From positions 150,554 through 214,553 of the IMG/VR virus record IMGVR_UViG_3300025012_000028: a stretch of DNA of 64,000 nt, one strand, 5' to 3'. The position numbers and the translations under genes were made by a program. Shown in pieces: positions 3,628 through 63,306 of this stretch; positions within the stretch are counted from its first letter, which is position 1; every line of letters starts with the position of its first letter. A model generated the notes under the pieces. That model had not been told where the DNA came from. It worked only from the letters and a program-made list of their open reading frames with translations, and ran no database searches.

Positions 3628-3662
3628 GAATTCATCCTACAAGGGAATTCTTTATTTGTCTA
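3628..3662 (-). promoter_or_regulatory. sigma70-like promoter TAGACA-17-TAGGAT, -10 flanked by short IR
   Basis: Motif upstream of gp45. Confidence 0.55.
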
Positions 3663-4173
3663 ATAATTTATTCACGCCGGAAAAACATTTTAAAATCTTT
3701 GTTGGCGGTTCGGATTTCTTCAACATCTTCCTCTTCATGTTCGTCACAATGAACCCACACCCATTTATATCCAATGAGAGTTTTCTCACAACCACAAGGC
3801 AAAACTTCAGTTTCCATTAATACCAAAACTCCTTTTTACTTGATCTTCGTTTTTATTGATGTACCTGAGATGATTTTTCATTTGCTCCATCACTTCATTC
3901 CTATCAGAATATTCAACATCTGAACGGCTCATTATCCACGGACCATACGAAACTCGAACAGTCCATAAAAGTTTACCATTTGCAGGTTCTACAAACCACG
4001 CACTGAAAGTCTTCATTCGTATTCCTCTCTTGTTAGTATTTGTTGACACTCACTGCAAAACCCCCAGATACGGAAAACATCTCTCTCGTTCTTATCCCTG
4101 AAATCTTCCACACGAATATCTTCCAGACATCTAGAGCAATATTCCTGTGTTCCAAAATCACTTTCTATTTCAC

Positions 4174-4365
4174 TCACCGCTTTCTCCCAAAATAATAATT
4201 CAATTCTAATATCTGTTTACCCAAAGTATTAGGTGTCTTTCCTAATCCTTTACATGCCCAACACACTTCAGACACTTCCACCGATATACCGATCTTTGAA
4301 AGTAAGAAGCCTTCACCTTTACATTTCTCACATGTTTCTGTGATAAATTGATTTTCCATTTTCAT
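4174..4365 (-). CDS. Small DnaJ-type Zn-finger protein
   Basis: CEKCKGEG and CWACKGLG. Confidence 0.6.
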   Translation of the reverse strand: MKMENQFITETCEKCKGEGFLLSKIGISVEVSEVCWACKGLGKTPNTLGKQILELNYYFGRKR

Positions 4366-4652
4366 ATCATCTCACCGATCATATAATTTGGAATTATTTC
4401 TATATCCCTGACAAACCCACCAACATTAATTTCGGGTAATTGTTGACTATATTTGAATGCTTCGGATTTTGAATCTATTTTGAAAATAATATTATCTCTT
4501 GCCTGTTTTGTTTCTAAACTTTTAAATTCAAATCTCCCATCTATCTTACATAAAACAAACGTCTCATTTAACCACTTATACCCAAGAGCAAACCACTTAT
4601 CATAACGCAAATCTTTGATGAATGAGCCAACGGTTCTTCCACGTTTATGCAT
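4362..4652 (-). CDS. Hypothetical protein
   Basis: ORF track with RBS. Confidence 0.55.
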   Translation of the reverse strand: MHKRGRTVGSFIKDLRYDKWFALGYKWLNETFVLCKIDGRFEFKSLETKQARDNIIFKIDSKSEAFKYSQQLPEINVGGFVRDIEIIPNYMIGEMI

Positions 4653-4664
4653 TGAATGACTCCA

Positions 4665-4889
4665 TTACATTTCAATTTTGGGTTGGTTTGCATTGCGCTG
4701 AACAGACTTATTATAAGCCTTGATAACCTTCCTGCTCCTTGCCTTGGCAATACGTATTGCCTTGCCCCTAGAACAGCTATTCTCGACCATCAGACGTGAT
4801 ATAATATCATCGAATCTGGTCTTTTGTTGATCCAAAAATTGCTGTTCATCATCATTTGAAATCATTGAATGTGCTGGTGCTTCCGTCAT
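4665..4889 (-). CDS. Hypothetical protein
   Basis: ORF track, AGGAGA RBS. Confidence 0.55.
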   Translation of the reverse strand: MTEAPAHSMISNDDEQQFLDQQKTRFDDIISRLMVENSCSRGKAIRIAKARSRKVIKAYNKSVQRNANQPKIEM

Positions 4890-4899
4890 ATCATCTCCT

Positions 4900-5328
4900 T
4901 TATTTTCCGGTGTATTTTATTTCATGAACTTTCACACCACAATTCTTGGCACGTTTAACCATATCATTACTTCCCGGTGTACCAGTTTTACTCTTCCTGA
5001 TATCGTTGATGATAATGGCATGAGTCGATTTTTCTGCCATCACTTGGTTTCTATTGAAACCAGCAAGGCAATTATATTCTTTTCCATTGCGAGTTTTGAT
5101 CTTACAGATAGGAACAGTGAGGTCATTCCAATCGGCGGGGTTCTCATCGACTTTGAAATTATTTTCTATTGCCCAACGGAAAGCGATATCATCGACACCT
5201 TCCGGTGCCATTCCATCAACAATACATTCGATAAGATTTCTCTTGGGGAGGATTAACTTGTTGAGGGTTCTGTAAATAAAACCAACATCAGTAATCGACC
5301 TACTACCAGCAATCAACAGGCGAATCAT
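4900..5328 (-). CDS. SLOG-fold protein (YspA/DUF2493-like)
   Basis: IAGSR, GMAPEGVD, ADW, AGFNRNQVM, PGSNDMV. Confidence 0.8.
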   Translation of the reverse strand: MIRLLIAGSRSITDVGFIYRTLNKLILPKRNLIECIVDGMAPEGVDDIAFRWAIENNFKVDENPADWNDLTVPICKIKTRNGKEYNCLAGFNRNQVMAEKSTHAIIINDIRKSKTGTPGSNDMVKRAKNCGVKVHEIKYTGK

Positions 5329-5354
5329 TGTAAATCCTCATAACTCAATTTATT

Positions 5355-6131: not shown

Positions 6132-6139
6132 AATAACTC

Positions 6140-6661: not shown

Positions 6662-6952
6662 TTATCCTTCCACCACGAAGATTTTTCTTGCGGCACGAAT
6701 TTCTTTAACCCTATTTACATCGAAGGAACGATATTGTTTTTTACTCATTTCAAATACCGTCACAATGTTATCAGGAGATGCAGCTTTGTTCTTGGAAGGA
6801 TTTTGGACCAGATGTTTATAAACTCCCCTGCGGCAATTCATCTTGCGTTCCGAACCGTCCTTTTTCTCAAAATGTACAGAAAAAATAGCACTCTTGGGGA
6901 TCATACACAGGATCATCTCAACTTCTTCTTTCGAAATGGATATTTTTCTCAT
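6662..6952 (-). CDS. SH3/WYL-like beta-barrel phage protein (DUF2693-like)
   Basis: FSVHFEKKDGSERKM, VFEM.KKQYRSF. Confidence 0.7.
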   Translation of the reverse strand: MRKISISKEEVEMILCMIPKSAIFSVHFEKKDGSERKMNCRRGVYKHLVQNPSKNKAASPDNIVTVFEMSKKQYRSFDVNRVKEIRAARKIFVVEG

Positions 6953-6954
6953 AA

Positions 6955-7019
6955 AAATTCCTCCTAGAGTATGATTCGAAATCTAGGAGGAATTTACCAC
7001 GGAATTAATTATTTGTCAA
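6955..7019 (-). promoter_or_regulatory. sigma70-like promoter TTGACA-17-TAAATT overlapping 14-bp IR that contains the RBS
   Basis: -35 at 7014-7019, -10 at 6991-6996; aaattcctcctaga/tctaggaggaattt. Confidence 0.75.
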
Positions 7020-9900: not shown

Positions 9901-10104
9901 TTTATTATCCCTCCGCAATTCGTTCAAAGTTCATCATATCAAATTTCATTTTGCGTCTACCCATTCTACCCAGACGTTTCAGATCTTTTTTGGGAGGAGC
10001 ACAACAGGAACATTTCCACCCACCAATCCCAATACAAAGATATTTCTCCCTCATACGTCTGGTGATCAAGATTGGTGATTTCATAATTCCTCCTCAGATA
10101 AATT

Positions 10105-10148
10105 AAAAGCCTGAATAAACTTATATCATTTATTCAGGCTTTTGTCAA
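10105..10148 (-). promoter_or_regulatory. Terminator hairpin with embedded promoter TTGACA-17-TATAAG
   Basis: 15-bp IR 10105-10119/10129-10143; -10 in loop. Confidence 0.8.
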
Positions 10149-14258: not shown

Positions 14259-14277
14259 TTAATTTTCCTCCCAAAAT

Positions 14278-14321
14278 AAAAAACGTATCCGAACTTTACA
14301 TCCGAATACGTTTTTTGTCAA
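14278..14321 (-). promoter_or_regulatory. Terminator of late operon with embedded promoter TTGACA-17-TAAAGT
   Basis: IR aaaaaacgtatccgaa/tccgaatacgtttttt, -10 at loop, T tract follows on minus strand. Confidence 0.75.
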
Positions 14322-14339: not shown

Positions 14340-16076
14340 TTAATTAACCATATACCCAAATCCAGATTCATCTTTTAAAAAGTTCCTTGCGTCCAATTGT
14401 TCCCAACCGTCGAACCCGTAGTACGGCTGACTCGTTTTTATTTCAAATCCAATTCCATTTTCCAATTCAAAATCGGAATCAGTTAATAACAACATCACAG
14501 TTTTGAAATTCGTATATACTTTCATTGGTGCCTGATTCCATTTATTATCTACATCATTAATAAATGCCTCATCTTCTAGGTCGTTATATGTTTCCCCTCC
14601 AATTGTTATATCAAAACTTTTCAGCCCACCGTCTAAAGCAGACATCATTTCGTTATATCTGCCACCTTCAATACCTCTCTCCGCTGCCCATCTACATTGA
14701 GTATAAAGATCATCTCCCTCATCTTCCAAAAACTGGAACATATCATCTTCCCAATTTTCTTCATCCTCGTCCGGATATTCTTTTCTAATATACTCTTCAA
14801 CTTTCTTTTCGTCCAACATTTCATAACATTCTCTTATAGTATCATCACTCACTTCTATATCTGGGTCCGAATCTTGGTCTACTATCCATTTGGTTGTATC
14901 GTCACCATAATTTTCAACTAGGTCTTCTAAATCTCTGGCTTCATATATGACTGCAAATTCTTTCTTTTCATCCCACTCTAAAGAATGAAGATCTTTCGAA
15001 ATCCAGAGTTCATTCATTCTCTGCATAAATGAATCGGTTTTTCCTACTTTCTTATAATAATCCATCAAACCCATCAACTCGGGTCGTTGTTCAAATAAAT
15101 CTTCTTTAAATTCATCTGACAAATCTTCGGTACTAAAATCCGAATCTTGTCCATAAGAGGAACGTTCTATCCCTTTGATATAATAACTTTCGGTTCCCTT
15201 GGTTGATGTTACTTCTTTATGGAGCAGCAAATCCAGAATGTACTTGTGGTACTTCTCAACGGGTTTGGTATTTTGTTTGCCCTTCATTTGATATAAGATA
15301 TGATCATCACTACCCATCTCAAAAGTCAGATGGGGTTCCCATAACCACGTAGACGGTTCAGATTTGCGTTTGTTGAGGTATCGGAGGGAAAGTAAGGTAC
15401 TACCATGACTTCCAGTTCCGCAGTGTCCCATTGCCCTACTCTCGTTGCTACAGTAGTTGGTGTTGAGGTCTACCCAATACCAACCGTTCCCATACTCGAT
15501 TATAGGAAAACATCTTTTGTCTGGATAACCTTCTTCATGATCCAATGGTTGTTTGATATACTGAACTGTTCCATCTAACTCTGATGCCCATTCCTTTTCA
15601 ATCTTTTCCATATCGGCAAACACTTCTTCGGGGAATTTACCGGTAGGATTATAATCATCAATCTCTTTTAAGTGAAGATCCAGAAAGTGTTTATATTGAG
15701 TCAATGTTTTTCTAGGTAGAAAATCATTTTGCATTTTACTATCTAATATGTCGGGTCTATCCGCCAGATTAAATTTTTTACATTCGCTTTGTAAAAGTTT
15801 TTTGTAATATTGTTTTATGTTCTGTTCAGCAACTTTATCATCTAGAGTTAAATTGTCTAGTGTCCATGCCATATATATCTGCATTAATTTATTATACCAA
15901 ATAATTCTAAAATTCTTTTTTAAATACTCTGGCGATTGAAGAACATAAGATCTATAATATGTGTCGATTACCGGAGTAACTTTACCCAATTCCAAAACTT
16001 TGGTAAACATCTGCGAATAATCATATGCCTCAAGCAGCAGAGGAGCATGTAAAAAGGTTTTAAAAGAAATCATCAT
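14340..16076 (-). CDS. Putative internal head protein with PcfJ-like central domain
   Basis: Leader MISFKTFL...LLE; E..AMGHC, LLSLR, PHLTFE, QMKGKQN.KP; acidic C-terminus. Confidence 0.6.
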   Translation of the reverse strand: MMISFKTFLHAPLLLEAYDYSQMFTKVLELGKVTPVIDTYYRSYVLQSPEYLKKNFRIIWYNKLMQIYMAWTLDNLTLDDKVAEQNIKQYYKKLLQSECKKFNLADRPDILDSKMQNDFLPRKTLTQYKHFLDLHLKEIDDYNPTGKFPEEVFADMEKIEKEWASELDGTVQYIKQPLDHEEGYPDKRCFPIIEYGNGWYWVDLNTNYCSNESRAMGHCGTGSHGSTLLSLRYLNKRKSEPSTWLWEPHLTFEMGSDDHILYQMKGKQNTKPVEKYHKYILDLLLHKEVTSTKGTESYYIKGIERSSYGQDSDFSTEDLSDEFKEDLFEQRPELMGLMDYYKKVGKTDSFMQRMNELWISKDLHSLEWDEKKEFAVIYEARDLEDLVENYGDDTTKWIVDQDSDPDIEVSDDTIRECYEMLDEKKVEEYIRKEYPDEDEENWEDDMFQFLEDEGDDLYTQCRWAAERGIEGGRYNEMMSALDGGLKSFDITIGGETYNDLEDEAFINDVDNKWNQAPMKVYTNFKTVMLLLTDSDFELENGIGFEIKTSQPYYGFDGWEQLDARNFLKDESGFGYMVN

Positions 16077-16457
16077 TTACCTCAACGTCCCAAGTTTAAT
16101 AAAATCACCCGAATCTAACAGTTCGTGTACTCCGGTTCCATATTTCATCCCAGAATGTTTAACTGCATATTGACTTCCAGATTCCTCTTCACCTATAGTT
16201 TTTGTAAGATACATAGGGGAATCAAATTTAATATTCCAACTATAACCAGTCACCTGATAAACTTTACCAGTCTTATTTGATTTGAATCTATCACCCACTC
16301 CCAAGCGCCATCCTTGGTATGCCTCAATCTTTTCCATCATGTCTTTCACACCAAGCTTAATATCATCCCTCAATTTCTTATGAAACTCCCTTTCGGGTCT
16401 GGTGATAAGAGGAATGGGTTCTTTATCTTCGGTGATAAATTCTTTGAATGAAATCAT
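16077..16457 (-). CDS. Putative internal head protein
   Basis: Leader MISFKEFITE resembles T4 capsid-targeting sequence. Confidence 0.65.
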   Translation of the reverse strand: MISFKEFITEDKEPIPLITRPEREFHKKLRDDIKLGVKDMMEKIEAYQGWRLGVGDRFKSNKTGKVYQVTGYSWNIKFDSPMYLTKTIGEEESGSQYAVKHSGMKYGTGVHELLDSGDFIKLGTLR

Positions 16458-16483
16458 GGAGTTATCCTATATGAATTTTTTAT

Positions 16484-16512
16484 TTGACAATTACGGATTT
16501 CGGAGTTAAAAT
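16484..16512 (+). promoter_or_regulatory. sigma70-like promoter TTGACA-17-TAAAAT, antisense to late operon
   Basis: Near-consensus, intergenic, no credible + ORF downstream. Confidence 0.6.
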
Positions 16513-16571
16513 AATCTTGTCCGTTAGGACATAGACATCTACTGCCTTTTATTATAGGACAATGGACAATC

Positions 16572-17003
16572 CTAGAAATCATCATCTTCATCGGGAGGAA
16601 TGACTTCTACAACATCATATTTCTCACCAATATATTTATTTGAATATAAAAAGTCCTTCATATCTTCTACATCGACCCAACCTAATTTAAGATTGGTGGA
16701 AGTCAGAGTTATAATGCAGCTATACTTTTTAAATTTCTTCATTTCTCCAACAAAGTTAATTTCCAAACACAGAGGTTTTTCTAATTCAAATTTCCGCGCA
16801 ACATCTGTATGTAGAATGGTATCCCCGAAACCATAAACAATTTCACCATCCACAACAACTACTCTCATGATATCCCAACTCTTAACAACCTCTATGGATT
16901 TGATTTCATCAAAGGTGGGATTTTCGAATATAAGTTGTTCCTCACGCTTATACATGTAGGAATCTTTATAATTTTCGGATAAAAATTTTTTGAATGATAT
17001 CAA
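16572..17003 (-). CDS. Putative internal head protein
   Basis: TTG start with GAGG RBS; leader ISFKKFLSE. Confidence 0.6.
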   Translation of the reverse strand: MISFKKFLSENYKDSYMYKREEQLIFENPTFDEIKSIEVVKSWDIMRVVVVDGEIVYGFGDTILHTDVARKFELEKPLCLEINFVGEMKKFKKYSCIITLTSTNLKLGWVDVEDMKDFLYSNKYIGEKYDVVEVIPPDEDDDF

Positions 17004-43440: not shown

Positions 43441-43804
43441 TTTGATTGTCTTGCCTCTCTATATTGTTCTATGTATTTTTGATAATCTTCAAGGTTCTTA
43501 TTGTTGAGTTCAAATAACATATGAAAAGCATTACCCACTCTCAAAGGAGGACCAAGAGGAGGTTTTGAAATATCGATAATATTTTCTCCTTTAGGATCAA
43601 ATATTCTCAATTTCATTTCATCTTCCTTACTTCTTTACGTTTAACATCTCGTTTTTCTTTGGTATCATATAGACACGGTTTACCATCTTCCATTACATGG
43701 TGCCACGCTCCATCAACTAATACATCCAAACCATAACTAACTGTCATTGTGGTTGTATTCAACCAATCGTTCGTTTTTGTTCTCATATTTTCTCCTTAAA
43801 AATA

Positions 43805-43856
43805 AATAAGAGCTATCAATATGTTTCATGATAGCTCTTATTATTTCGGAAGTCTA
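43805..43856 (-). promoter_or_regulatory. Terminator hairpin overlapping promoter TAGACT-17-TATCAT
   Basis: 14-bp IR 43805-43818/43829-43842. Confidence 0.7.
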
Positions 43857-48946: not shown

Positions 48947-48954
48947 TATTTATA
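48947..48954 (-). promoter_or_regulatory. T4-type late promoter TATAAATA
   Basis: Exact consensus. Confidence 0.6.
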
Positions 48955-49754: not shown

Positions 49755-49782
49755 GATATCTCCATTAAAAATAAAATAACAA

Positions 49783-49823
49783 AAAAGCTACACCACAATA
49801 TCATGAATGTAGCTTTTCGCCAA
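49783..49823 (-). promoter_or_regulatory. Terminator hairpin with embedded promoter TTGGCG-17-TATTGT
   Basis: aaaagctaca/tgtagctttt IR, -10 in loop. Confidence 0.6.
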
Positions 49824-49834
49824 AGGTTTTTTTG

Positions 49835-50074: not shown

Positions 50075-50349
50075 TTGTCTCTAAACTCCCTCGGTGCCAA
50101 CGGAAAGAAAGCCCAATGTGTTATTTTATCTGCCCAATATGTGTGGGGTGTTCCGCCAATATAACGCCATTCACCATTAGAACAATATTCCGCAAACCCC
50201 ACATTGGAAATTTCATTTGGTTCGGTATAGTCGGAAAAGTGTACCAACACATCTATAATGATATTAAATTGTCCTTGATTAGTATACTCTTCCAACGGAA
50301 GACAATCTTTGATACTGAACCATTCTATCTCTACTTTATCAGGTTCCAC
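50071..50349 (-). CDS. DUF551-like protein
   Basis: WFSIKD.LP...ITHW...P.AP. Confidence 0.65.
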   Translation of the reverse strand: MEPDKVEIEWFSIKDCLPLEEYTNQGQFNIIIDVLVHFSDYTEPNEISNVGFAEYCSNGEWRYIGGTPHTYWADKITHWAFFPLAPREFRDK

Positions 50350-52154
50350 ATCTGCTCCTCTGTTTTAATTTCCACACCAAGTTTCTGTGCTTTAGTATAT
50401 TTATTACTCTTGTCCCACGAATCTTCCGCACAGAAAAGAATGTCCAAATTCTTATTCACAGAGTCCACAATGGTAGCTCCCAATTCCACACACCTAGCTT
50501 CCAGCTTTGCTTTCTTCTGGGAGAAGCTACCAGTGAAGAGAACTTTCTTACCGGACAAGATACCATCTACAATAACAACTTCTTCTTTGGGTTCCGGTTT
50601 CTTGTAACGGACACTATTGATGATCCTTTCCTTTATGCCCCAATTGACATCAAAAGAAAGTTTAGCTTTCTCCAATGTACGCACACCAATCCCAGACGGA
50701 AGGGAAGTAGTATTGGGATTTTCAAATGTAATTTTCATACTCTCAAGACTACCTACATGGTTCAGTAGACTATCGAAAAGTGTGGTTCCCAAACCGTTGT
50801 ATGGCAGATGTCTCATGATGTTTTCAGCAGTTGTCTCATAGACTTTTTCCTGTAAAGCCACATGGAAGTCGTTTTGAGATTTGTAAGATACATCAGGACA
50901 CCACGAAAGTAAAGCGTCAAATGACGTGACATTCCAATTCAAGAGGGACGATTCAGACACGTTTTCAATCCCAATCGACTTAATGAACGATTCCACACGT
51001 TTGACCTCACCACACTCAAGGTTGGGGCATTGAAGATCAACACCGTCCCACCCAAGAACCTCACCACATTCAGGACACTTGTTAGGTAAGGCGACGGCAG
51101 AGGTTTCGATGATTTCGATAATTTTGGGGATCACACATCCACTTTTGATAATTCCAACCCTAGCCCCGATCCCAAGACCTCTATCTAAAATCCACTGCGC
51201 ATTGTTACCAGTGCAACGTGAAATCGTGCTGCCATCGATATCCACAGGATTCACAAGAGCGACCGGTTTCAGTTTCCTCTCTTTGCTCAAGTTCCATTCA
51301 TAACCCAAGATGGTAGTTTCTGTGAAATCCGAATTAACCTTGAAAGCACTTTTCCTTTCAGGAAGGAATTTATCATTTTCATTCTTCCACTCGGAATCAC
51401 TTATAACCAAACCATCAATGTCGTATTGTGCTTCGTCCTTTGAATTAAGATAATATGCCTCCATGCGATCAATGAGGCTTTCTCCAACACTAAATATACA
51501 ATGTTCAGGAGTTTGAAATCCCTGTACCTTGAGGAAATTGAACTGTTCAACCACATTCAGATTATCTGACAGAACTTGATAAGCAAATGCCTCGACCATA
51601 TGAATATTTTCGGAAACCACATCCCTATTCATAAGGCCAACGGTTCCGTTGCGGCGATTCTTGAAAGAAAGGTGTTCGTGACTGTTATCAGTAAGGGTGA
51701 ATTCACCACGGACATCAGTAGGCTCAAGATATGAAATGGTTTTTGGAATGGAAGGGATTTTCATTGCTTTGTCCGTCCAATCGACACCAGACTCCCCATC
51801 ACCACGACTCGTAACTTTCTTAAGATTGCCGTTACGGTATTCCGCATACCAACTACACCCATCAATTTTCAGAGAAGCAAAAAGGTTTTTAATGTTATTC
51901 TTTTTGATCCATTTCCAAAATTTATCAGGTTCGTCTGATTTGAGTTTTTCTAATGAACCGATAACATAATCAAATTTTACATCTCCTGATGTTTCAGTTA
52001 GAGATTCCTTAAACTCAATAAACTCGTCCCACTTAAGTTCTTTCTGAATCTCTTCCAGAAGAAGGTCATAGGCCGCATCCGAAACCAGTTCGTCGCCGTT
52101 CCGATACGCCTTGTTATATTTTACAGCCAGTTCCATTTTTTCTGCTATGTTCAT
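50331..52154 (-). CDS. ligA: NAD-dependent DNA ligase
   Basis: Y..G...VSD..YD, KIDG, SRGDG..G.D, RGE, DGLV, Zn finger CP.C, C-terminal BRCT. Confidence 0.92.
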   Translation of the reverse strand: MNIAEKMELAVKYNKAYRNGDELVSDAAYDLLLEEIQKELKWDEFIEFKESLTETSGDVKFDYVIGSLEKLKSDEPDKFWKWIKKNNIKNLFASLKIDGCSWYAEYRNGNLKKVTSRGDGESGVDWTDKAMKIPSIPKTISYLEPTDVRGEFTLTDNSHEHLSFKNRRNGTVGLMNRDVVSENIHMVEAFAYQVLSDNLNVVEQFNFLKVQGFQTPEHCIFSVGESLIDRMEAYYLNSKDEAQYDIDGLVISDSEWKNENDKFLPERKSAFKVNSDFTETTILGYEWNLSKERKLKPVALVNPVDIDGSTISRCTGNNAQWILDRGLGIGARVGIIKSGCVIPKIIEIIETSAVALPNKCPECGEVLGWDGVDLQCPNLECGEVKRVESFIKSIGIENVSESSLLNWNVTSFDALLSWCPDVSYKSQNDFHVALQEKVYETTAENIMRHLPYNGLGTTLFDSLLNHVGSLESMKITFENPNTTSLPSGIGVRTLEKAKLSFDVNWGIKERIINSVRYKKPEPKEEVVIVDGILSGKKVLFTGSFSQKKAKLEARCVELGATIVDSVNKNLDILFCAEDSWDKSNKYTKAQKLGVEIKTEEQMWNLIK

Positions 52155-52176
52155 ATCTTCTCCTCACTTCAAAATA

Positions 52177-52219
52177 AAAACTCATGATTACTTATACCAC
52201 ATAATCATGAGTTTTGCAA
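52177..52219 (-). promoter_or_regulatory. Terminator hairpin with embedded promoter TTGCAA-17-TATAAG
   Basis: 14-bp IR 52177-52190/52202-52215. Confidence 0.75.
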
Positions 52220-52413
52220 ATCATTTTTTTTTATTTTCGTTAAATCAAATCATCACCACTTTCATCCCAATACGGAACCTCGTAATCATCGGGAAAATGG
52301 ATGGATTCGACTTCGATCAATTCTCTGAGCATACTAATTGAAATGTGTCTCAGTTGATCCTCGTCCAGATCGTTAATCCACTCTTCTATTTTCCGTGATG
52401 TAAACATTTTCAT

Positions 52414-52770
52414 TTAATCTTCCTCCACGTCTATTGTCGATAAAAAGTAAAATGGTCGTTCGTATTCATTGCTAAAGCCAGTACCATCGATGGTAACAAT
52501 CTCTGCTAGTTTTTCTTCATATAGTTTGTTACACTCCATATCCACACGTTCGTAATCTTCATCACTACTATTATTATCTAGCCCCACATACCTGTTGATG
52601 CTTTTATCTCTAAATTCATCAATAATAAAATCCCCAAATCTTTTGGATTCTTCCTGACATTGTGTTAAACATTCGTTGGCGCGTTCTTCATTGAAGAAAG
52701 CTTTGGTAACATACTCATATCTATCTTCATAATCACCCAATACACCCATAATACAATAAACAGTTTTCAA
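52414..52770 (-). CDS. Hypothetical acidic protein
   Basis: ORF track. Confidence 0.55.
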   Translation of the reverse strand: MKTVYCIMGVLGDYEDRYEYVTKAFFNEERANECLTQCQEESKRFGDFIIDEFRDKSINRYVGLDNNSSDEDYERVDMECNKLYEEKLAEIVTIDGTGFSNEYERPFYFLSTIDVEED

Positions 52771-52771: not shown

Positions 52772-53194
52772 TTAGTTGTTCTCCTTAATCATAAAATCAA
52801 ACCTTCGGATGGCATAATTATTAGTGACCATCGAACCACTTAAACTAGACATTGCCACAACAGAACTTCGTACCAGTTTATGTTCAATCAATGAAGCTAA
52901 CAATTTACCTTTTGGTGTTGGTAAAATTTGAAACTTACCAAAATATTTTTCTTTGTCTTTATGGATGTTGATTAACACATGGGAAACATTTATCAGATGA
53001 AGATCGAATTTTATTTCCTCTGGTGTATTGTATGCAGTTCCTAAACTTCTATTATTAGGAATGCAGTTCACCATATATTGATCTACCGCTTTATTTAATA
53101 TGTCTTCTGGATATATATTTCCATTTGGATCAGTATATTGTTTATGTTCCTCATTATATATGAACGTTGGAAATAACTGAAAGGTTTCAAACAT
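52772..53194 (-). CDS. Degenerate prohead protease (gp21) paralog
   Basis: NGNIYP..IL.KAV..Y, RSLG, INVSH, GK.QIL.TPKGK. Confidence 0.65.
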   Translation of the reverse strand: MFETFQLFPTFIYNEEHKQYTDPNGNIYPEDILNKAVDQYMVNCIPNNRSLGTAYNTPEEIKFDLHLINVSHVLINIHKDKEKYFGKFQILPTPKGKLLASLIEHKLVRSSVVAMSSLSGSMVTNNYAIRRFDFMIKENN

Positions 53195-54937
53195 CTATAT
53201 CTCCTCAATAGTGCTGAACCCACCCACTCTTTTTACAGAGTAATGGTTATCGATATACTTCACCGGAACATCGTTATGACTCATGATCATAGTACATTTT
53301 TTATTCTCGGCTGTAAATTCTTTTAGAATTTCGTAGAAAGTATTTTGCAGATTCTTGTCCAGACCTGTTCCCACTTCATCCAGAATCAACAAGTTGGAAG
53401 CACTCTGACTGTATTTTAAATTGCAGAAAGAGATGAACGCAAAGATGATTGCCAAATCGGAAATTCTTTTCTGACCTTCCGAAAGACTTTCATATTTGAA
53501 ATTCTCTTTGTGTCTGGTTAAGAATTCCTCATTCCATTCTTCATCAAACCGGAACAGAACATCTGCTCCAAATTTCTGAAGGTAAAGACTCAGGAACTTA
53601 TTGATACTAGGAAGATATTTCTTAACCACAAACGCTTTGATCTTATCGTCTGTCAGAAGTGTTCTACCATAGGCATAATGTTTTTTATCATATGCCTTAT
53701 CGTTATAATCTTTCTCAAGCTGTTTCTTTTGTTCGATATAACCTTTCAGCTTTGAATCATCAATCTTAATCTCTTGATCTTTCTCAACTTGAATTTGTTT
53801 CTTGAGATTTGCAATCTGTCTTGTGCCACTTGTTATGGCTTCCTGAAACCCTCGCTCCATATTGATATACTCTTGACACTTATCAATCTTGGGTTGGAAG
53901 GATCTTATCTCAGTTTCTTTTTGGGCCAGTTGTTCTTTGAGGATGGTTTGTTCTTTGAGAATGATAGTGTTATCAGCCGGTCTGTTCATCTCTTCTTCAA
54001 ACGCTTTTATCTTAGAACAAGTCCCACACGTCTTCTGAAGGAACTGAATCTTCTTTCCCTGATTTGCTCTTTCTGTTTCTTGTGCAGCAAGTGTGACATC
54101 GATGTTCTTTAATTTCTGTTCTATCTCACGATATTGATTCTTTAAAGTCTGTACTTCGTTGGATAATTCTGTTTTCTTGGTTTTATACTTTTGAATCTTC
54201 TCAACAGCCAATGTTTTTTTGTCAATTCCTTCTTGCAATTCAACTATTTGGGAATTGATTTCATCTATTTTTGCCGATGTTATTGCCGTTCTTTCATCCT
54301 TAAGCTGTTTCAGTCTTAGAAGGTGATCCTTCTCCTGAGTGATAAGAACATCGGTATAGTTCATATCTTTATTCAAGGAAGCAATCTCTTTGTCGAGAGC
54401 ATCAACTTTGAGTTTGGCAAGCTTGTTCATTGAGGTATACAGTTGAATGTTCAACATCGGCTCAACAACTTCACGCTTCTTGTCTTTGGTAAGTGTCAAG
54501 AAAGATGAATTCTTTGTCAGAGATTTGTAACTAACCTGCTCAAAAATGTTGGGAGTTGTTTTGAGATGATCCTGTTCAATAATTTCTTGATAAGATCGTG
54601 AAGATGATGGGACCGGAACTATCACATCATTTTTATACATACGAAGATAGTTCGGCTTAAGACCACGTTCAATCCTATAAGGAACAGAATTGATGTTGAA
54701 AAAATAATGGACCTCTGTTTCTTTTTTGTTGATGGAATTTATAAGATCTGGTAAATTGAATTTGCGGTATGGTTTACCAAAACACGCAAAATAAACCGCT
54801 TCAGTGATAGAACTTTTGCCCTCACCCGTTTCACCAGATAGTTTGTTCACACCCTGTTTAAAGTTAAACTCGGTCCAGTTGTTGCCATAACTTTGGAAGT
54901 TCCTGATCCTGATCTTTTCAGCTTCAATCATCAACAT
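53195..54937 (-). CDS. gp46: Recombination ATPase (Rad50/SbcC-like)
   Basis: NFQSYGN, GETGEGKS, FGKPYR, coiled coil with C..C hook, LSEGQ, LILDE. Confidence 0.93.
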   Translation of the reverse strand: MLMIEAEKIRIRNFQSYGNNWTEFNFKQGVNKLSGETGEGKSSITEAVYFACFGKPYRKFNLPDLINSINKKETEVHYFFNINSVPYRIERGLKPNYLRMYKNDVIVPVPSSSRSYQEIIEQDHLKTTPNIFEQVSYKSLTKNSSFLTLTKDKKREVVEPMLNIQLYTSMNKLAKLKVDALDKEIASLNKDMNYTDVLITQEKDHLLRLKQLKDERTAITSAKIDEINSQIVELQEGIDKKTLAVEKIQKYKTKKTELSNEVQTLKNQYREIEQKLKNIDVTLAAQETERANQGKKIQFLQKTCGTCSKIKAFEEEMNRPADNTIILKEQTILKEQLAQKETEIRSFQPKIDKCQEYINMERGFQEAITSGTRQIANLKKQIQVEKDQEIKIDDSKLKGYIEQKKQLEKDYNDKAYDKKHYAYGRTLLTDDKIKAFVVKKYLPSINKFLSLYLQKFGADVLFRFDEEWNEEFLTRHKENFKYESLSEGQKRISDLAIIFAFISFCNLKYSQSASNLLILDEVGTGLDKNLQNTFYEILKEFTAENKKCTMIMSHNDVPVKYIDNHYSVKRVGGFSTIEEI

Positions 54938-54955
54938 TCTCCATGTACAAAAATA

Positions 54956-54996
54956 AAAGGATAAATCAATCTACCACGATTTATCCTTTCAGTCTA
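54956..54996 (-). promoter_or_regulatory. Terminator hairpin with embedded promoter TAGACT-17-TAGATT
   Basis: 12-bp IR 54956-54967/54978-54989. Confidence 0.7.
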
Positions 54997-57997: not shown

Positions 57998-58759
57998 TCA
58001 TTCCAATTCCTTCCTAAGTTTCTTCAGGATGTTCCGCTCTATTTCCATCACCCTTTGTTGAGAAATATTGAAATGATCTGCCAGTTCTCGCATGGTCATT
58101 TTATTCTCAGCAATAATTCGATTATAAACGATATACTGTTCTCTGTCATTTAAAATCGACAATGCTTTATTAATTTTTTCTTTTAAATTATTTTCTTCCT
58201 GATAAGCAATCAACATATCTTCTTGGTTGTCGCGTTCATCGGGAATGATATCTTTAAACGAATCCCCATCACCATCTATAATATCCTCTAATGAATGTTC
58301 ACCCTTCAGTCTTTCGGCCATTTCCTGAACCTTATCTTCTGCGACATCAGTATGTGAATCAGTATTGAAGAACAATTTCTTCTGAAGTTGGGTCGTTCCA
58401 ATCTTAACCAGACTCCATGAATGCATTATATAATCTTGGATGTGCGCTCTGATCCAAAATACCGCATATGAAATGAGACGAACACCTTTATGTGGATTGA
58501 ATTTCCTGACAGCTTTCATCAAACCAATATTGCCCTCTTGGATTAAATCGAGTATATTAAGGCCATATTCTTTATACTCAAGGGCAACCTTAAGGACGAA
58601 CCTCAAATTGGATTCTATGAGTATCCTTGCGGCTTCTAGGTTGTTATTTTCATATAAATCTATCGCAAGTCGTTTTTCCTCTTCATGTGTCAGAAGAGGG
58701 AACTTTCTAATTTCTTGTGTGTAAAGTTCAAAATTATCTATGGTGGTTATGTTGTTCAA
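57998..58759 (-). CDS. rpoH: sigma70-family sigma factor, RpoH (sigma32)-like
   Basis: PLLT.EEE, DLIQEGNIGLMKAV.KF.P..G.RL.SYA.FWI, RpoH box TTQ.QKKLFFN, region 4 HTH. Confidence 0.85.
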   Translation of the reverse strand: MNNITTIDNFELYTQEIRKFPLLTHEEEKRLAIDLYENNNLEAARILIESNLRFVLKVALEYKEYGLNILDLIQEGNIGLMKAVRKFNPHKGVRLISYAVFWIRAHIQDYIMHSWSLVKIGTTQLQKKLFFNTDSHTDVAEDKVQEMAERLKGEHSLEDIIDGDGDSFKDIIPDERDNQEDMLIAYQEENNLKEKINKALSILNDREQYIVYNRIIAENKMTMRELADHFNISQQRVMEIERNILKKLRKELE

Positions 58760-59456: not shown

Positions 59457-60422
59457 TTAATTTAATTTTTCGATAACTCCACGGCCACCACAACATTCAC
59501 ATTCTACCAGTTCTTTATTGATCATGTCAATTAATTCTTCCAGATAAACCTTAATATTATTTCGAAGATCTTCATAATTCTTACCTTCAAATTCCTTGGT
59601 TCTAGTATATCCTTTGTAAACTCCTTCCCTGCCCCCTCTATCGGGTGCAGTTTCAAAAACTTGAACATCCCTGTTGTGACGATACCGCACTTCGAATTTA
59701 GGTTTCTTGGGGCGCTTGCTGAAGAAATCCAAATTAACATCCACTTCATATACTTCTGGAACTGCCAATGGAATCATCTTCTGAACAACTAAACAAAACT
59801 CATAATCACTGGAAAGCCTTGCGACCTTTCTATCAATATTCTCCTGAAGATATTGACGAATGATCTTAAAACTTTCCGCCGAAGAAAGCTTACAGGGTTT
59901 GGTTGTCAGAAGAACCGGATGAGTGTTGAGTTGATCCAACAGATTATATTGCAGTTCAAATTTCTGATCTACAATCTTGAACTGATCCAGTTCTTCAATG
60001 ATGTTAAGTTCAAATGGAACATCTTCTAACGTCTCTTCGGTTGTGTCATACTGACATTCATAGAGGGATTGAAACGGACTTATATTGGGTGGAAAGAAGA
60101 ATGTAGTATATTCATCCTCACCATACTTTTTATATTCAATTATTGCAGGCAATACATTGGTTGGTGTAATTTCTTGATTCAATACCCATCTTCTATTAAT
60201 CATCTGAGGAGGAATTACTTTCTCAATCTTAGTTGGAAGCTTTGCAATTTCAAACCACTGAGATTTAAAGGTGGATAATGGTTGTTTTCCATCAAACAAA
60301 AGATCAGAAATGTTTGGGTAATTGACCCAAGATTTATTGCTAAGGTCAGCGGAAATATATACACAGGTCTTGGTTTTGATTGCAATCAATTGTAAGACTG
60401 AATTGGGTGTGAATTCTTTCAT
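59457..60422 (-). CDS. Hypothetical phage protein
   Basis: 321-aa ORF, C-terminal C.CC.G.G. Confidence 0.65.
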   Translation of the reverse strand: MKEFTPNSVLQLIAIKTKTCVYISADLSNKSWVNYPNISDLLFDGKQPLSTFKSQWFEIAKLPTKIEKVIPPQMINRRWVLNQEITPTNVLPAIIEYKKYGEDEYTTFFFPPNISPFQSLYECQYDTTEETLEDVPFELNIIEELDQFKIVDQKFELQYNLLDQLNTHPVLLTTKPCKLSSAESFKIIRQYLQENIDRKVARLSSDYEFCLVVQKMIPLAVPEVYEVDVNLDFFSKRPKKPKFEVRYRHNRDVQVFETAPDRGGREGVYKGYTRTKEFEGKNYEDLRNNIKVYLEELIDMINKELVECECCGGRGVIEKLN

Positions 60423-61059: not shown

Positions 61060-62190
61060 TTACCATCTCCTTTTAGAATTGAATTTATTGTACCTAACAC
61101 GCCGCTTTAGAAAATCCCAATCATTGATAATTGCCGTACTACCAACACACATCAACAAACTTATGATCGAAGCAAATACTATCACCCAGATTGGCATATT
61201 GATCTGAGCCTTGAGGTATTCAAAATCTTTCATCGACTTGCGTTTAAAATTTTGCATCACATTCGAACTAACCAGTTCTATAAATTTATCGCTGGTGGTA
61301 ATCGTTTTCATGTCCATCAGTTCTTGTTCTAGCTGGACTTGAAATAGATTGTTATTGCAAAGAGCGAATACCTTTACCCAAGAAATTTCAGGATAATTCG
61401 GCGTACCAACAACAACCACTATATCATTTTTCTTGGCACCATTCCATTTCTTTCTTGCTGCATACGCATATTCTTTATCGGTATTTTTAGTAAAGAGAAG
61501 AATAATATTCGCTTCCCTTTGTGTACCCAACAACCTAAGAGCATTGGACAGATCCAGATTCCATTTGTTAATGTCCGTTAAAGGAACTCCGTTAGATATC
61601 ACCCTAACAATATAATGATAATCGTAAATGTTGCCGGGATAATCAGGAATACTGCTCATAAACTTTTCATAATCACCCTTAGAAACATTGAACAGTGATT
61701 CAGGAACCGCCTTGATGTAATTGGTATAAACATGTTGTGTCGCCATTGGATCATCTATTTTGGCCTTAGTCCATCGGGGAGGTTCAACAATCCCCTGCCT
61801 ATCCACACGATCAATGGTGATGGCATTATCAATCGAATCTTCCAATACCCAAATAAAATCTTCGGAGTGTTCATAACAAGTATCACAGACTGTAGTTGTG
61901 GTTTGATCCTTACCGGAACCAGATGTTACAGTTCTACAGTTGCAAGTATAAGAATGTTCACATGGTACGGACTTTTTATATTTTTTGACGATTCTACTAT
62001 TCCAAATCTCAAAATCCGATGTCTGAGAACGAAATGCCCAATACTGCAAACTACAACCAATGATGATGGTAATGACTGCTATAACACCGGCAATTCTATA
62101 ATCAATTTCTTGTTTAAACCACAAATGAGAGACGGAATACCAGACGATAGGAATGAGCAACAGCAGAAGAACCCAAGGATTAAAATGCAT
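61060..62190 (-). CDS. Membrane protein, 3 TM with large extracytoplasmic domain
   Basis: C.HSY.CNC...CDTCY.H; W.G.KKND.VVV; C-terminal TM. Confidence 0.65.
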   Translation of the reverse strand: MHFNPWVLLLLLIPIVWYSVSHLWFKQEIDYRIAGVIAVITIIIGCSLQYWAFRSQTSDFEIWNSRIVKKYKKSVPCEHSYTCNCRTVTSGSGKDQTTTTVCDTCYEHSEDFIWVLEDSIDNAITIDRVDRQGIVEPPRWTKAKIDDPMATQHVYTNYIKAVPESLFNVSKGDYEKFMSSIPDYPGNIYDYHYIVRVISNGVPLTDINKWNLDLSNALRLLGTQREANIILLFTKNTDKEYAYAARKKWNGAKKNDIVVVVGTPNYPEISWVKVFALCNNNLFQVQLEQELMDMKTITTSDKFIELVSSNVMQNFKRKSMKDFEYLKAQINMPIWVIVFASIISLLMCVGSTAIINDWDFLKRRVRYNKFNSKRRW

Positions 62191-62203
62191 TTATTTCCTC
62201 CAA

Positions 62204-62452
62204 TTAAAGTTTAATTCCGTTTTCGCGCCAAATAAAATCGCCAAATTTAGATTCAAATCTACATTTAAGACCCATCGAAGCACCCACGATACCAAACATA
62301 TTACAGGGGTTCTTTATATCTGAATAGGTATGTATTTCTCTATTTGCCAAAGATAAATAACGCTCCACAATCTTCTTATCTTCTATCGAAGAAGTATCGA
62401 TCAGACGTTTCATTTTCTGAAATGGAGTCATTGCGTCTTCGTAATTTATCAT
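62204..62452 (-). CDS. Hypothetical protein
   Basis: ORF track. Confidence 0.45.
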   Translation of the reverse strand: MINYEDAMTPFQKMKRLIDTSSIEDKKIVERYLSLANREIHTYSDIKNPCNMFGIVGASMGLKCRFESKFGDFIWRENGIKL

Positions 62453-62626
62453 TTCTGCACACAGAATGCTTTGATCTGTCTTGAGTGATTCATCAATATG
62501 TGTGCCGCGCTTTTACAACGGTCTATATCAAAGAACTCCTGTGTGGTTACTGGATAAAAATTTCCCGATGATGTGCCGGTGATGATCAAAATATAAATTA
62601 TGGCTGAAGACATTATTGTTCTCCTT

Positions 62627-62965
62627 TTAAGTTAAATAAACATTAATTTCATAACGACCAGTAGATTGTTTGTACCAATAAAGGGAAACCAAAACCTTGG
62701 GAACGTTTCCTTCTTCGTTGGCGATTTGAAGATAACAGGAACCTTCCACGCCACAGAAAACCCCCTCCCACGGTGTGCCATCTTCCTGAATCAAATGGTA
62801 GCCAATTTCATTGACGATTGCCTCAATATCGGCAATGGGAATGTGAGGATGATATACTTTGGAAAGAAGGTAGAAACCAGCACCAACTTTCTTTCTCTGA
62901 GCCTGTGTAATTTTAGGAACGATGGGAGTCGAATAGAGTCCTGTAATTTCTTTGATATAATTCAT
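62627..62965 (-). CDS. Hypothetical protein
   Basis: ORF track, AGGAG RBS. Confidence 0.6.
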   Translation of the reverse strand: MNYIKEITGLYSTPIVPKITQAQRKKVGAGFYLLSKVYHPHIPIADIEAIVNEIGYHLIQEDGTPWEGVFCGVEGSCYLQIANEEGNVPKVLVSLYWYKQSTGRYEINVYLT

Positions 62966-63234
62966 ATCTTAACTCCTTTCCGTTTATTTGAAATCCTTCT
63001 CTGTCTATCTTTACCTTTGTGGATTTCAGAACCCCTCATTCCTTCCAGAAATGAATAACGTTTTTCTTCCCATCCTTTTGAGTGGGGAAAACTTTCATCC
63101 CACAAATCCATAGCGCGATGTCCGTCAAATGATTCTAGGAGTTGGATAATTTCGGCTTGGAGTTTCTTGTGTGCATTCTTCAACTCTTTATACCGTTTCT
63201 TTAAATCTTCGTGTTGAAGTTCTAATGAAATCAT
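62962..63234 (-). CDS. Hypothetical protein
   Basis: ORF track, AGGAGG RBS. Confidence 0.55.
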   Translation of the reverse strand: MISLELQHEDLKKRYKELKNAHKKLQAEIIQLLESFDGHRAMDLWDESFPHSKGWEEKRYSFLEGMRGSEIHKGKDRQRRISNKRKGVKI

Positions 63235-63258
63235 AACTATCCTCCTTTAAATAAAAAA

Positions 63259-63306
63259 TTCCCCAAACCGTAGATAGAATATATCAGGGTTTGGGGAAAT
63301 TGTCAA
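63259..63306 (-). promoter_or_regulatory. Terminator hairpin with embedded promoter TTGACA-17-TATATT
   Basis: ttccccaaacc/ggtttggggaa IR, -10 in loop, T tract. Confidence 0.8.

What the first reader, a model, noticed from the sequence alone, without database searches (positions are those of the whole stretch)
3628..63306. Recurring 'promoter inside a terminator' modules
Seen: at 10105, 14278, 49783, 52177, 54956 and 63259 (variants at 3628, 6955, 43805) a T(T/A)G-type -35 is followed by exactly 17 nt and a -10, often with extended TG. The spacer forms the 5' arm of a 10-16 bp inverted repeat, the -10 is in the loop, and the 3' arm ends in a U tract. The arm sequences differ at each site, so the geometry is conserved, not the sequence. 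Inference: read-through RNA terminates while newly initiated RNA lacks the 5' arm, giving a compact stop-and-restart insulator; cruciform extrusion could also gate the promoters.
Basis: partly seen in the sequence, partly recalled or inferred. Interest (0 to 1): 0.7.

Follow-up and report, generated by a model that had tools for sequence, protein, structure and literature searches.

The report
Phage promoters nested inside terminator hairpins
An uncultured T4-like giant phage from groundwater packs a start signal for transcription inside the hairpin of a stop signal between many of its early genes; the pattern is real and conserved, but it is a form of the 'PeSL' promoter-terminator cassettes already described in T4-like phages.

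Summary
On the minus (coding) strand, the six named sites and 43805 share one layout. A -35 hexamer is followed by exactly 17 nt that form the 5' arm of a 13-17 bp hairpin. A -10 hexamer sits wholly or mostly in the loop (TGn in 5 of the six named sites). Then come the 3' arm, a T tract, a Shine-Dalgarno and the start codon. All of this fits into 80-89 nt between genes.

Genome-wide (214.5 kb), 9 of 119 terminator-like hairpins carry such a promoter at p<0.01, against 1.2 expected. The arms differ between sites.

Site 6955 is shifted: the -10 lies at the stem base and the arms are anti-SD/SD. Site 3628 is not a terminator.

Relatives keep modules at syntenic places with compensatory arm changes. 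In a distant T4-like clade, nine versions of one module keep TTGACA-17-TAnAnT while 13 of 16 stem pairs covary.

No RNA data exist, so promoter and terminator activity are inferred.

These are PeSL-type elements (Arbiol 2010; Comeau 2014), in the subclass where the stem-loop overlaps the -10. Here they have long AT-rich stems, U tracts and non-repeated arms. The stop-and-restart reading is well supported by inference. Cruciform gating is not supported. Verdict: a new member of a known kind.

The parts
10097..10148 (-). Module 1. -35 TTGACA at 10148-10143; 17-nt spacer; TGa plus -10 TATAAG at 10125-10120. Hairpin 10143-10105 (16 bp, loop 7), then a T tract. ATG at 10084. The upstream gene stops at 10169-10167.
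   Evidence: flagged terminator-like; dG -19.8, z -7.1
14270..14321 (-). Module 2. -35 TTGACA at 14321-14316; 17 nt; -10 TAAAGT at 14298-14293. Hairpin 14316-14278 (17 bp with 2 G-U pairs, loop 5), then a T tract. ATG at 14258. The upstream 578-aa gene stops at 14342-14340.
   Evidence: flagged promoter-like; dG -18.6, z -5.0
43797..43856 (-). Hairpin 43842-43805 (14 bp, loop 10), then a T tract. ATG at 43786. The predicted start of transcription is in the loop.
   Evidence: p 0.014; dG -19.7, z -6.6
49774..49823 (-). Module 4. -35 TTGGCG at 49823-49818; 17 nt; TGa plus -10 TATTGT at 49800-49795. Hairpin 49818-49782 (13 bp, loop 11), then a T tract. GTG start at 49754. It has a syntenic counterpart in relative L001 (5745-5797).
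   Evidence: (p 0.006)
52169..52219 (-). Module 5, upstream of the NAD-dependent DNA ligase gene. -35 TTGCAA at 52219-52214; 17 nt; TGg plus -10 TATAAG at 52196-52191. Hairpin 52215-52177 (15 bp, loop 9), then a T tract. ATG at 52154. It has a syntenic counterpart in L001 (3538-3590) with 3 compensatory pair changes.
   Evidence: (p 0.012)
54946..54996 (-). Module 6, upstream of the gp46/SbcC-like gene. -35 TAGACT at 54996-54991; 17 nt; TGg plus -10 TAGATT at 54973-54968. Hairpin 54991-54954 (15 bp, loop 8), then a T tract. The gene starts at 54937/54934.
   Evidence: p 0.007; flagged terminator-like
63251..63306 (-). Module 7. -35 TTGACA at 63306-63301; 17 nt; TGa plus -10 TATATT at 63283-63278. 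Hairpin 63298-63259 (14 bp with 1 mismatch, loop 12), then T6. ATG at 63234. The upstream gene stops at 63326-63324.
   Evidence: best score; flagged promoter-like, 11 of 12 plus TG
6950..7019 (-). Shifted variant. -35 TTGACA at 7019-7014; 17 nt; TGg plus -10 TAAATT at 6996-6991, at the base of the stem. Hairpin 6995-6982 pairs with 6968-6955. The 5' arm holds CCTCCT (anti-SD) and the 3' arm holds AGGAGG (SD). T5 follows, then ATG at 6952. The predicted start near 6984 leaves only 3 nt of the 5' arm.
   Evidence: Same logic as the T4 e/soc/49/I-TevI leaders (PMC3014915).
3628..3662 (-). Promoter-like site TAGACA-17-TAGGAT around a 6-bp GAATTC palindrome. There is no T tract. It is not a member of the module class.

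Best explanation
These are composite early promoter/intrinsic terminator elements of a T4-superfamily phage. They belong to the class published as PeSL (promoter-early stem-loop), in the subclass where the stem-loop overlaps the -10.

Proposed mechanism:
1. RNA polymerase arriving from the upstream gene transcribes both arms. The RNA folds a 13-17 bp hairpin directly before a U tract, and most transcripts end there.
2. The same DNA carries a primary-sigma promoter: an AT-rich upstream region, a TTGACA-like -35, a 17-nt spacer that also encodes the 5' arm, TGn, and a -10 in the loop.
3. Polymerase starting there begins in the loop or the 3' arm. Its RNA lacks the 5' arm, cannot form the hairpin, reads through the U tract, and carries an unstructured 27-37 nt leader with a free Shine-Dalgarno.
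4. Each small early gene therefore gets its own dose of transcription in an intergenic space of only 65-89 nt.

Shown here: the geometry, its excess over chance, its conservation with compensatory changes, and the invariance of promoter-critical bases.

Inferred: that termination and initiation actually occur, and that the host's primary sigma factor reads the promoters.
For: Phage identity. The genome encodes gp46/SbcC-like, UvsX-like, DnaB/gp41-like and baseplate wedge proteins. Relatives carry gp23, gp32, UvsY, UvsW and gp25. The genome is a single 214.5-kb virus record from groundwater.

Excess over chance. 9 of 119 hairpins carry a promoter at this register against 1.19 expected. All spacers are 17 nt. 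All sites are on the coding strand.

Two classes of hairpin. Promoter-bearing hairpins have a median loop of 9 nt. Strong ordinary terminators have a median of 5 (p 2e-4).

Promoter features. The extended -10 TGn is present in 8 of 11 genome-wide (binomial 2e-8). The upstream AT-rich region and -35 match the phage's ~19 hairpin-free 17-nt-spacer promoters aligned.

RNA structure. A new RNA from the predicted start has dG 0.

Compactness. Stop-to-start distances are 65-89 nt.

Synteny. Relative L001 (gp46 63% identical) has modules at the two matching places, before the ligase gene and after the ligase plus small genes. In the ligase module 3 pairs changed on both sides, none on one side, and 14 of 15 pairs are kept.

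Other relatives. L003, L005, L006 and L007 also carry modules.

Distant clade. Nine versions of one module keep the -35 invariant, a 17-nt spacer and a TAnAnT -10, with 13 of 16 pairs compensatory and 97% of cells paired.

Published tests of the class. In RB49, one stem-loop cut lacZ expression about as much as rrnB T1, and one whole element gave about 13,000 Miller units (PMC2839356). My scan of RB49 found the same geometry upstream of alt, at L010:12374.
Against: No RNA-seq run holds this phage, so no 5' or 3' ends have been seen.

Two -10 hexamers are TATAAG, which lacks the -7 T. Three modules (49823, 52219, 54996) score only p 0.006-0.012.

The stems are AT-rich (3-6 G-C pairs) with long loops. 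This should weaken termination compared with the phage's own tetraloop terminators.

Some orthologues in the distant clade keep the hairpin but have no U tract. The conserved role of the hairpin therefore need not be intrinsic termination.

The phage encodes its own RpoH-like sigma factor, so which holoenzyme is used is not certain. However, the motifs fit sigma-70 and not sigma-32.
Confidence: 0.72

Rival explanations
1. The elements are mainly terminators. The hairpins are real, but several of the promoter-like hexamers (49823, 52219, 54996) are weak or decayed and contribute little initiation. In that case those sites stop transcription without restarting it.
For: TTGGCG/TATTGT, TTGCAA/TATAAG and TAGACT/TAGATT score p 0.006-0.012. 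The L001 orthologues have better hexamers (TTGACA/TAAAGT; TTTACA/TACTAT), which suggests decay in the window's copies.
Against: All three keep the exact 17-nt spacing and TGn. Core genes (ligase, gp46) lie directly downstream and would have no other nearby promoter.
Confidence: 0.12
2. The overlap is a by-product of compaction. Independent terminators and promoters were squeezed together by selection for short intergenic regions. The overlap has no regulatory meaning beyond saving about 25-35 nt per junction.
For: Intergenic distances are 65-89 nt. The same genome also has ordinary terminators followed by separate promoters, for example at G000 119483 and 77199. The spacer is the only sequence-free part of a promoter that can host an arm.
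Against: The arrangement persists over deep divergence at the same loci, with co-variation. This rival is not truly exclusive of the main explanation, because the parts would work the same way.
Confidence: 0.1
3. The hairpins act on RNA rather than as terminators. They could protect 3' ends, serve as nuclease processing sites, or sequester translation signals in read-through RNA.
For: Some distant-clade orthologues keep the hairpin without a U tract. At 6995-6955 and at L006:10758 the 3' arm holds the Shine-Dalgarno. T4 has precedents in e, soc, 49 and I-TevI.
Against: In the seven window modules the Shine-Dalgarno lies outside the hairpin. A run of 4-6 T ends or directly follows every stem.
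Confidence: 0.08
4. The control is at DNA level. Supercoiling extrudes a cruciform that exposes or hides the -10 and so gates the promoter.
For: The -10 lies between inverted repeats in AT-rich DNA. There is no direct evidence.
Against: Loops of 5-14 nt disfavour extrusion (general knowledge, not tested here). In the distant clade the -10 is inside the stem, yet the element is conserved. In RB49 the whole stem-loop sits in the spacer.
Confidence: 0.03
5. The elements are recombination cassettes. As proposed for PeSLs, the modules would be sites of exchange that shuffle the genes they flank, forming mini-circles.
For: This role was proposed for the family (PMC2839356, PMC4122927). Most flanking genes are ORFans.
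Against: The arms are unique (identity 0.32), so shared sequence between modules is only a few bases. Strain variants have identical modules, and their differences begin inside genes rather than at modules. The one clear deletion variant (52773 to 53196) is not bounded by modules.
Confidence: 0.05

Closest known systems
PeSL (promoter-early stem-loop) cassettes of T4-like phages: RB49/phi1 (Arbiol et al. 2010, PMC2839356); PST/T4 and nt-1/KVP40 (Comeau et al. 2014, PMC4122927)
   Same: Both occur in T4-superfamily phages, in the space between small early genes. The order of parts is the same: the upstream stop codon in AT-rich DNA, a sigma-70-type -35, 17 nt, a -10, a stable stem-loop, a Shine-Dalgarno and a start codon. 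The stem-loop is proposed to stop upstream transcription. One published subclass has the stem-loop overlapping the -10. I saw this geometry in RB49 at L010:12374, 14786 and 19937.
   Different: Most RB49 stem-loops are short G-run/C-run hairpins that lie wholly inside the spacer and have no U tract. In PST and nt-1 they lie upstream of the promoter. Here the stems are 13-17 bp and AT-rich, they span the -10, and they end in U tracts like classical intrinsic terminators. PeSLs are described as repeated, roughly 100-bp conserved motifs that recombine. Here the arms are unique and no module-bounded rearrangement was seen.
T4 leaders of genes e, soc, 49 and I-TevI, where a promoter lies inside the 5' strand of an inhibitory hairpin (reviewed by Uzan and Miller 2010, PMC3014915)
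   Same: The logic is the same. A long transcript forms the hairpin. A transcript started from the promoter inside it lacks the 5' strand and escapes. Window site 7019-6950 and L006:10758 also have the Shine-Dalgarno in the 3' arm.
   Different: In T4 the internal promoter is a late (TATAAATA) promoter, and the hairpin blocks translation rather than transcription. In the seven main modules here the promoter is sigma-70-type, the Shine-Dalgarno lies outside the hairpin, and a U tract follows the stem.
[quoted passage not shown] 2019, PMC6735719)
   Same: A terminator of one unit overlaps the promoter of the next on the same strand. The overlap is conserved over long times.
   Different: Those are bacterial chromosomal operons. 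The proposed effect there is that polymerase load on the terminator lowers initiation at the overlapped promoter. The exact register of hairpin and hexamers was not compared here.
Classical intrinsic (Rho-independent) terminators
   Same: A hairpin is followed by a U tract, often with an A tract upstream so that the element is symmetric.
   Different: Loops are 5-14 nt rather than 3-6, as in this phage's own ordinary terminators. The stems are AT-rich. A promoter is built into the structure.

Membership tests
PeSL composite promoter-terminator cassettes | Found in a T4-type phage genome, in intergenic space between co-directional genes | tested here: met
   T4-like core genes are present. Upstream stop codons and downstream start codons flank each module at 65-89 nt.
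PeSL composite promoter-terminator cassettes | Sigma-70-like promoter (TTGACA-N17-TATAAT type) with an AT-rich upstream region | tested here: met
   All spacers are 17 nt. Promoter scores reach p<0.01 in 9 hairpins, TGn is present in 8 of 11, and the upstream consensus is A-rich. This is a sequence match only.
PeSL composite promoter-terminator cassettes | Stable stem-loop at one of five positions relative to the promoter (here, overlapping the -10) | tested here: met
   dG is -12 to -21 kcal/mol, z is -4 to -7, and the -10 lies in the loop or at the arm end.
PeSL composite promoter-terminator cassettes | Shine-Dalgarno and start codon of the next gene at the 3' end | tested here: met
   GGAG-type motifs and starts lie 27-37 nt after the predicted transcription start in 10 of 11 modules.
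PeSL composite promoter-terminator cassettes | Copies are a repeated, sequence-conserved motif of about 100 bp | tested here: not met
   Mean pairwise identity of the arm columns is 0.32 (maximum 0.57). Only the functional consensus is shared.
PeSL composite promoter-terminator cassettes | Enriched in hyperplastic regions next to ORFans, and associated with indels between close relatives or with mini-circles | tested here: inconclusive
   Most neighbouring genes have no Pfam hit, but the ligase and gp46 genes are also served. Strain variants show identical modules, and no breakpoints lie at them.
PeSL composite promoter-terminator cassettes | Promoter and terminator activity in vivo | not testable with these tools
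   No RNA run holds the phage. Activity was shown only for RB49 elements of another subclass.
Intrinsic terminator | Hairpin immediately followed by a U tract on the transcribed strand | tested here: met
   The independent scan flags 10143 and 54991.
Intrinsic terminator | Release of transcripts at the U tract | not testable with these tools
   No Term-seq or RNA data are available.
T4 e/soc/49/I-TevI-type translational hairpin with an internal promoter | Shine-Dalgarno or start codon paired in the hairpin, with the promoter inside the 5' strand | tested here: not met
   This is met only at 7019-6950 and L006:10758. In the seven main modules the Shine-Dalgarno lies 3' of the hairpin.

The most novel reading that the evidence does not exclude
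The hairpin and the promoter may be one coupled machine rather than two overlapping signals. A polymerase that has just released its RNA at the U tract is sitting on the embedded promoter. It could be recaptured by sigma and restart without leaving the DNA. Output of the downstream gene would then be tied to the flow from upstream, a built-in recycling or ratio-setting device. Supporting this, the critical -10 bases stay fixed while their neighbours covary with the 3' arm across deeply diverged phages. That shows the two functions evolve as a unit.
Probability: 0.1. Interest if true: 0.6.

Novelty: new member of a known kind. Interest (0 to 1): 0.3.

Why it matters
The result extends PeSL-type promoter-terminator composites from cultured coliphages and vibriophages to uncultured environmental T4-like phages, including a 214-kb groundwater phage.

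It adds what the original papers lacked: comparative evidence. Compensatory arm changes occur at syntenic loci. In a second clade, 13 of 16 pairs covary beside an invariant -35, a fixed 17-nt spacing and fixed -10 key bases. Together these indicate that hairpin and promoter are jointly under selection.

It also shows a form built like a textbook intrinsic terminator with non-repeated arms. That separates the regulatory role of these elements from the recombination role proposed for PeSLs.

In practice, such modules are compact natural insulator parts of about 50 bp. They are also a caution for annotation, because terminator finders that require short loops, and promoter finders used alone, both miss them.

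Tried and rejected
- Megablast of 4.6 kb against the phage collection found no match.
- A ligase peptide scan of IMG/VR found no relatives.
- The RNA run search listed only three tiny SOLiD metatranscriptomes, none holding the stretch. No transcript evidence was possible.
- T4 itself (1-50 kb, both strands) has no promoter-in-hairpin module. Its best score was 6.2 and its terminators are tetraloops. The design is therefore not universal among T4-likes.
- I looked for strain-level evidence of module-mediated exchange. Laying DNA contigs on the stretch gave a weak joint from 49781 to 52758 (side 21, one contig). I set it aside as unreliable.
- Eight contigs encoding the identical ligase have identical modules. 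Their gene-call differences start inside the downstream ORFs, not at modules.
- The phage-encoded sigma factor is RpoH-like. The module hexamers do not fit the sigma-32 consensus (general knowledge), so I did not assign the promoters to it.
- My first loose scans were too noisy to use: hairpins with any pairing, RNAfold around every promoter-like site, and a crude gene caller.
- The covariation shuffle test on two sequences has little power (72 of 500). The argument there rests on all six arm substitutions being paired.

Full report
**What the window is.** The 64-kb window is the right end of a single 214,553-bp virus contig with 36.5% GC. It was assembled from groundwater metagenomes. Nearly all genes lie on the minus strand. 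They include gp46/SbcC-like, UvsX-like, DnaB/gp41-like, NAD-ligase and baseplate-wedge proteins. Relatives found through gp46 carry gp23, gp32, UvsY, UvsW and gp25. This is an uncultured jumbo member of the T4 superfamily. It has no close DNA relative in the phage collection.

**The observation.**
- the stop codon of the upstream gene;
- 11-22 nt of AT-rich DNA;
- a -35 hexamer (TTGACA three times, plus TTGGCG, TTGCAA and TAGACT);
- exactly 17 nt;
- a -10 hexamer, preceded by TGn in five of six;
- a T tract, a GGAG-type Shine-Dalgarno and the start codon.

The spacer, often with the last base of the -35, is the 5' arm of a 13-17 bp hairpin. The -10 lies wholly or mostly in the 5-12 nt loop. 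The 3' arm follows and runs into the T tract. ViennaRNA folds each as a single hairpin of -16 to -20 kcal/mol, with z-scores of -4.1 to -7.1, and no shuffle in 200 folds as well. Stop-to-start distances are only 80-89 nt at these sites and 65-89 nt genome-wide.

**Is it more than chance?** Counts of promoter-like or terminator-like sites alone are not above shuffles. The combination is. I listed every hairpin with a T tract and dG <= -9 on both strands of the whole genome (119 in all). For each I took the best sigma-70 weight-matrix score with the -10 placed over the loop. Nine reach p<0.01 against random genome positions, where 1.19 are expected (Poisson 4.5e-6). There is a clean gap to the next hairpins. 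All nine have a 17-nt spacer and lie on the coding strand. None is the mirror-strand reading of a hairpin.

With a slightly wider register the set is 11 genome-wide, seven of them in the window (the six plus 43856-43797). Promoter-bearing hairpins have a median loop of 9 nt, against 5 for the phage's strong ordinary terminators (p 2e-4). TGn is present in 8 of 11. The arms share no sequence: mean identity is 0.32.

**The three variants.**
- 43805 fits. The -10 is at the end of the 5' arm and the predicted start is in the loop.
- 6955 is a different register. The -10 sits at the stem base, the 5' arm contains CCUCCU, and the 3' arm contains the Shine-Dalgarno. T5 and the ATG follow.
- 3628 is only a promoter-like site around a GAATTC palindrome, with no T tract.

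**Context in the same genome.** About 35 other strong sigma-70-type promoters upstream of genes are not in hairpins. Many share a conserved spacer (TTGACT, an AT-rich run, gTGg, TAnnAT). Ordinary terminators with 3-6 nt loops also occur. Some are followed by a separate promoter. In the structural-gene region some are followed by the T4 late-promoter motif TATAAATA, which is enriched in the window (19 copies against 6.7 expected). The nested design is one of several used by this phage. It accounts for roughly half of the intergenic terminator-like hairpins on the coding strand of this window.

**Comparative evidence.** No RNA run holds this phage, so I looked for selection instead.

The closest relative with sequence, L001 (gp46 63% identical), has modules at the two syntenic places: directly before the ligase gene, and after the ligase plus a small ORF. 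Before the ligase, the -35 columns, the 17-nt spacing and TGg are kept. Fourteen of 15 stem pairs are kept. All six substitutions inside the arms form three compensatory pairs. The second pair of modules also has different arms that still pair.

More distant relatives (L003, L005, L006, L007; GC 30-51%) have further modules.

In 1.11 Mb from 87 loci of environmental T4-like phages, 2.0% of terminator-like hairpins carry a strong embedded promoter, against 0.1% at random positions.

One of these is a single orthologous locus in a distant clade, lying between a ClpP-like gene and a conserved 724-aa gene. Across nine distinct versions:
- the -35 is invariantly TTGACA;
- the spacer is always 17 nt;
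- the -10 is always TAnAnT, so the two bases most important for sigma-70 stay fixed;
- 13 of 16 stem pairs show changes on both sides, and 97% of cells pair.

The alignment for these counts was fitted to the structure, which favours pairing. However, RNAalifold on a plain MAFFT alignment of five sequences finds the same helix, with ten of its 31 predicted pairs compensatory.

In that clade the -10 lies at the end of the 5' arm, not in the loop. Some members also lack a U tract. What is common to all versions is that the predicted start lies 3' of the 5' arm.

**Mechanism.** The best-supported reading is stop-and-restart.
- Read-through RNA contains both arms, folds before the U tract and terminates.
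- RNA started at the embedded promoter begins in the loop or 3' arm. It is predicted to be unstructured (dG 0) and passes the U tract with a free ribosome site.
- At 7019-6950 and L006:10758 the same trick also frees the Shine-Dalgarno, which is paired in read-through RNA.

The geometry and the selection on both halves are shown. Termination, initiation and the identity of the sigma factor are inferred.

Caveats:
- Three of the six promoters are weak, and two have TATAAG.
- The stems are AT-rich with large loops.
- The phage encodes an RpoH-like sigma factor (window 57998-58759). The hexamers fit sigma-70, however, not sigma-32.
- The cruciform idea has no support. It is hard to reconcile with versions where the -10 is in the stem, or where the whole stem-loop is in the spacer, as in RB49.

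**Comparison with what is known.** The design is published. Arbiol et al. 2010 (PMC2839356) described PeSLs in RB49 and phi1. These are intergenic cassettes with a near-consensus sigma-70 promoter and a stem-loop that sits between the -35 and -10, overlaps either box, or lies just outside them. 'Between' and 'overlapping the -10' are the commonest positions. In that work a stem-loop cut lacZ expression about as much as rrnB T1, and a whole element drove about 13,000 Miller units. Comeau et al. 2014 (PMC4122927) extended PeSLs to PST/T4 and nt-1/KVP40, where the stem-loop lies upstream of the promoter, and suggested they occur in probably all T4-likes.

My own scans gave the following:
- Most RB49 elements carry a short G-run/C-run hairpin inside the spacer. 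A few have the -10 in the loop, and one, upstream of alt, looks just like the modules here.
- The first 50 kb of T4 has none of the nested kind.

The escape logic, a promoter inside the 5' strand of a hairpin, is also classical for T4 e, soc, 49 and I-TevI (PMC3014915). Terminator-promoter overlaps between bacterial operons were analysed by Brandis et al. 2019 (PMC6735719).

The present elements meet the structural definition of a PeSL. They differ in three ways:
- They are built like canonical intrinsic terminators, with long AT-rich stems and a U tract.
- Their arms are unique rather than repeated.
- They show no sign of module-bounded rearrangement among strain variants.

**Verdict.** The main interpretation is sound but was already proposed, and partly tested, for this family. 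The cruciform addition is unsupported. This is a new member of a known kind, in a distinct structural form. Its added value is strong covariation evidence and a wider phylogenetic range.

Noticed in passing
window 57998-58759 (-): The phage encodes a 253-aa sigma-70-family protein with regions 1.2, 2 and 4. Its best match is the RpoH (sigma-32) subfamily NF005143, above that model's cut-off. This hints at a proteobacterial host and at a phage-directed promoter class not yet identified. Relative L005 also encodes a sigma-70-family protein.
   Followed up: partly
window 59457-60422 (-): A 321-aa protein matches Pfam Gad1 (Gabija anti-defence 1) over its full length (E 4e-96). It lies next to the sigma factor gene.
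   Followed up: no
window, e.g. 24459-24466, 34161-34168, 36684-36691, 48947-48954 (-): The T4-type late promoter motif TATAAATA occurs 19 times against 6.7 expected. No shuffle in 100 reached 19. Several copies lie just after ordinary short-loop terminators and before structural genes.
   Followed up: partly
G000:C1, e.g. 40832, 62875, 68469, 88579, 94110 (+); 131170, 128457, 125151 (-): A second promoter family is not in hairpins and has a conserved spacer: TTGACT, an AT-rich run such as ttaatttaaaat, gTGg, then TAnnAT. It is followed by a Shine-Dalgarno and start about 15-30 nt later. There are about 19 or more copies, nearly all outside the window. This may be the sequence-repeated counterpart of RB49 PeSLs.
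   Followed up: partly
window 52773-53196: Contigs in two DNA runs join 52773 directly to 53196. This removes exactly the 140-aa ORF at 52772-53194, just downstream of gp46. It is a strain variant lacking one gene, and the deletion is not bounded by modules.
   Followed up: partly
G000:C1:48582-48650 (+), outside the window: A strong promoter (TTGACT-16-TGtTATTAT) is followed at once by a complete 14-bp, 3-nt-loop terminator hairpin with a T tract, and then by a Shine-Dalgarno and start. The predicted start of transcription lies at the 5' edge of the stem, so here the new RNA would still form most of the hairpin. It looks like an attenuator and is the opposite of the modules.
   Followed up: no
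window 16001-20000: GC rises to 45% against about 35% elsewhere. The rise falls within the 1000-aa tail-fibre/depolymerase-like gene at 17217-20219. This suggests recent acquisition or a distinct composition of the host-recognition gene.
   Followed up: no
L064:13264-13365, L050:5291-5393, L054:4934-5032: Some orthologues of the distant-clade module keep the promoter and the co-varying hairpin but have no U tract after the stem. The conserved role of the hairpin there may not be intrinsic termination.
   Followed up: partly
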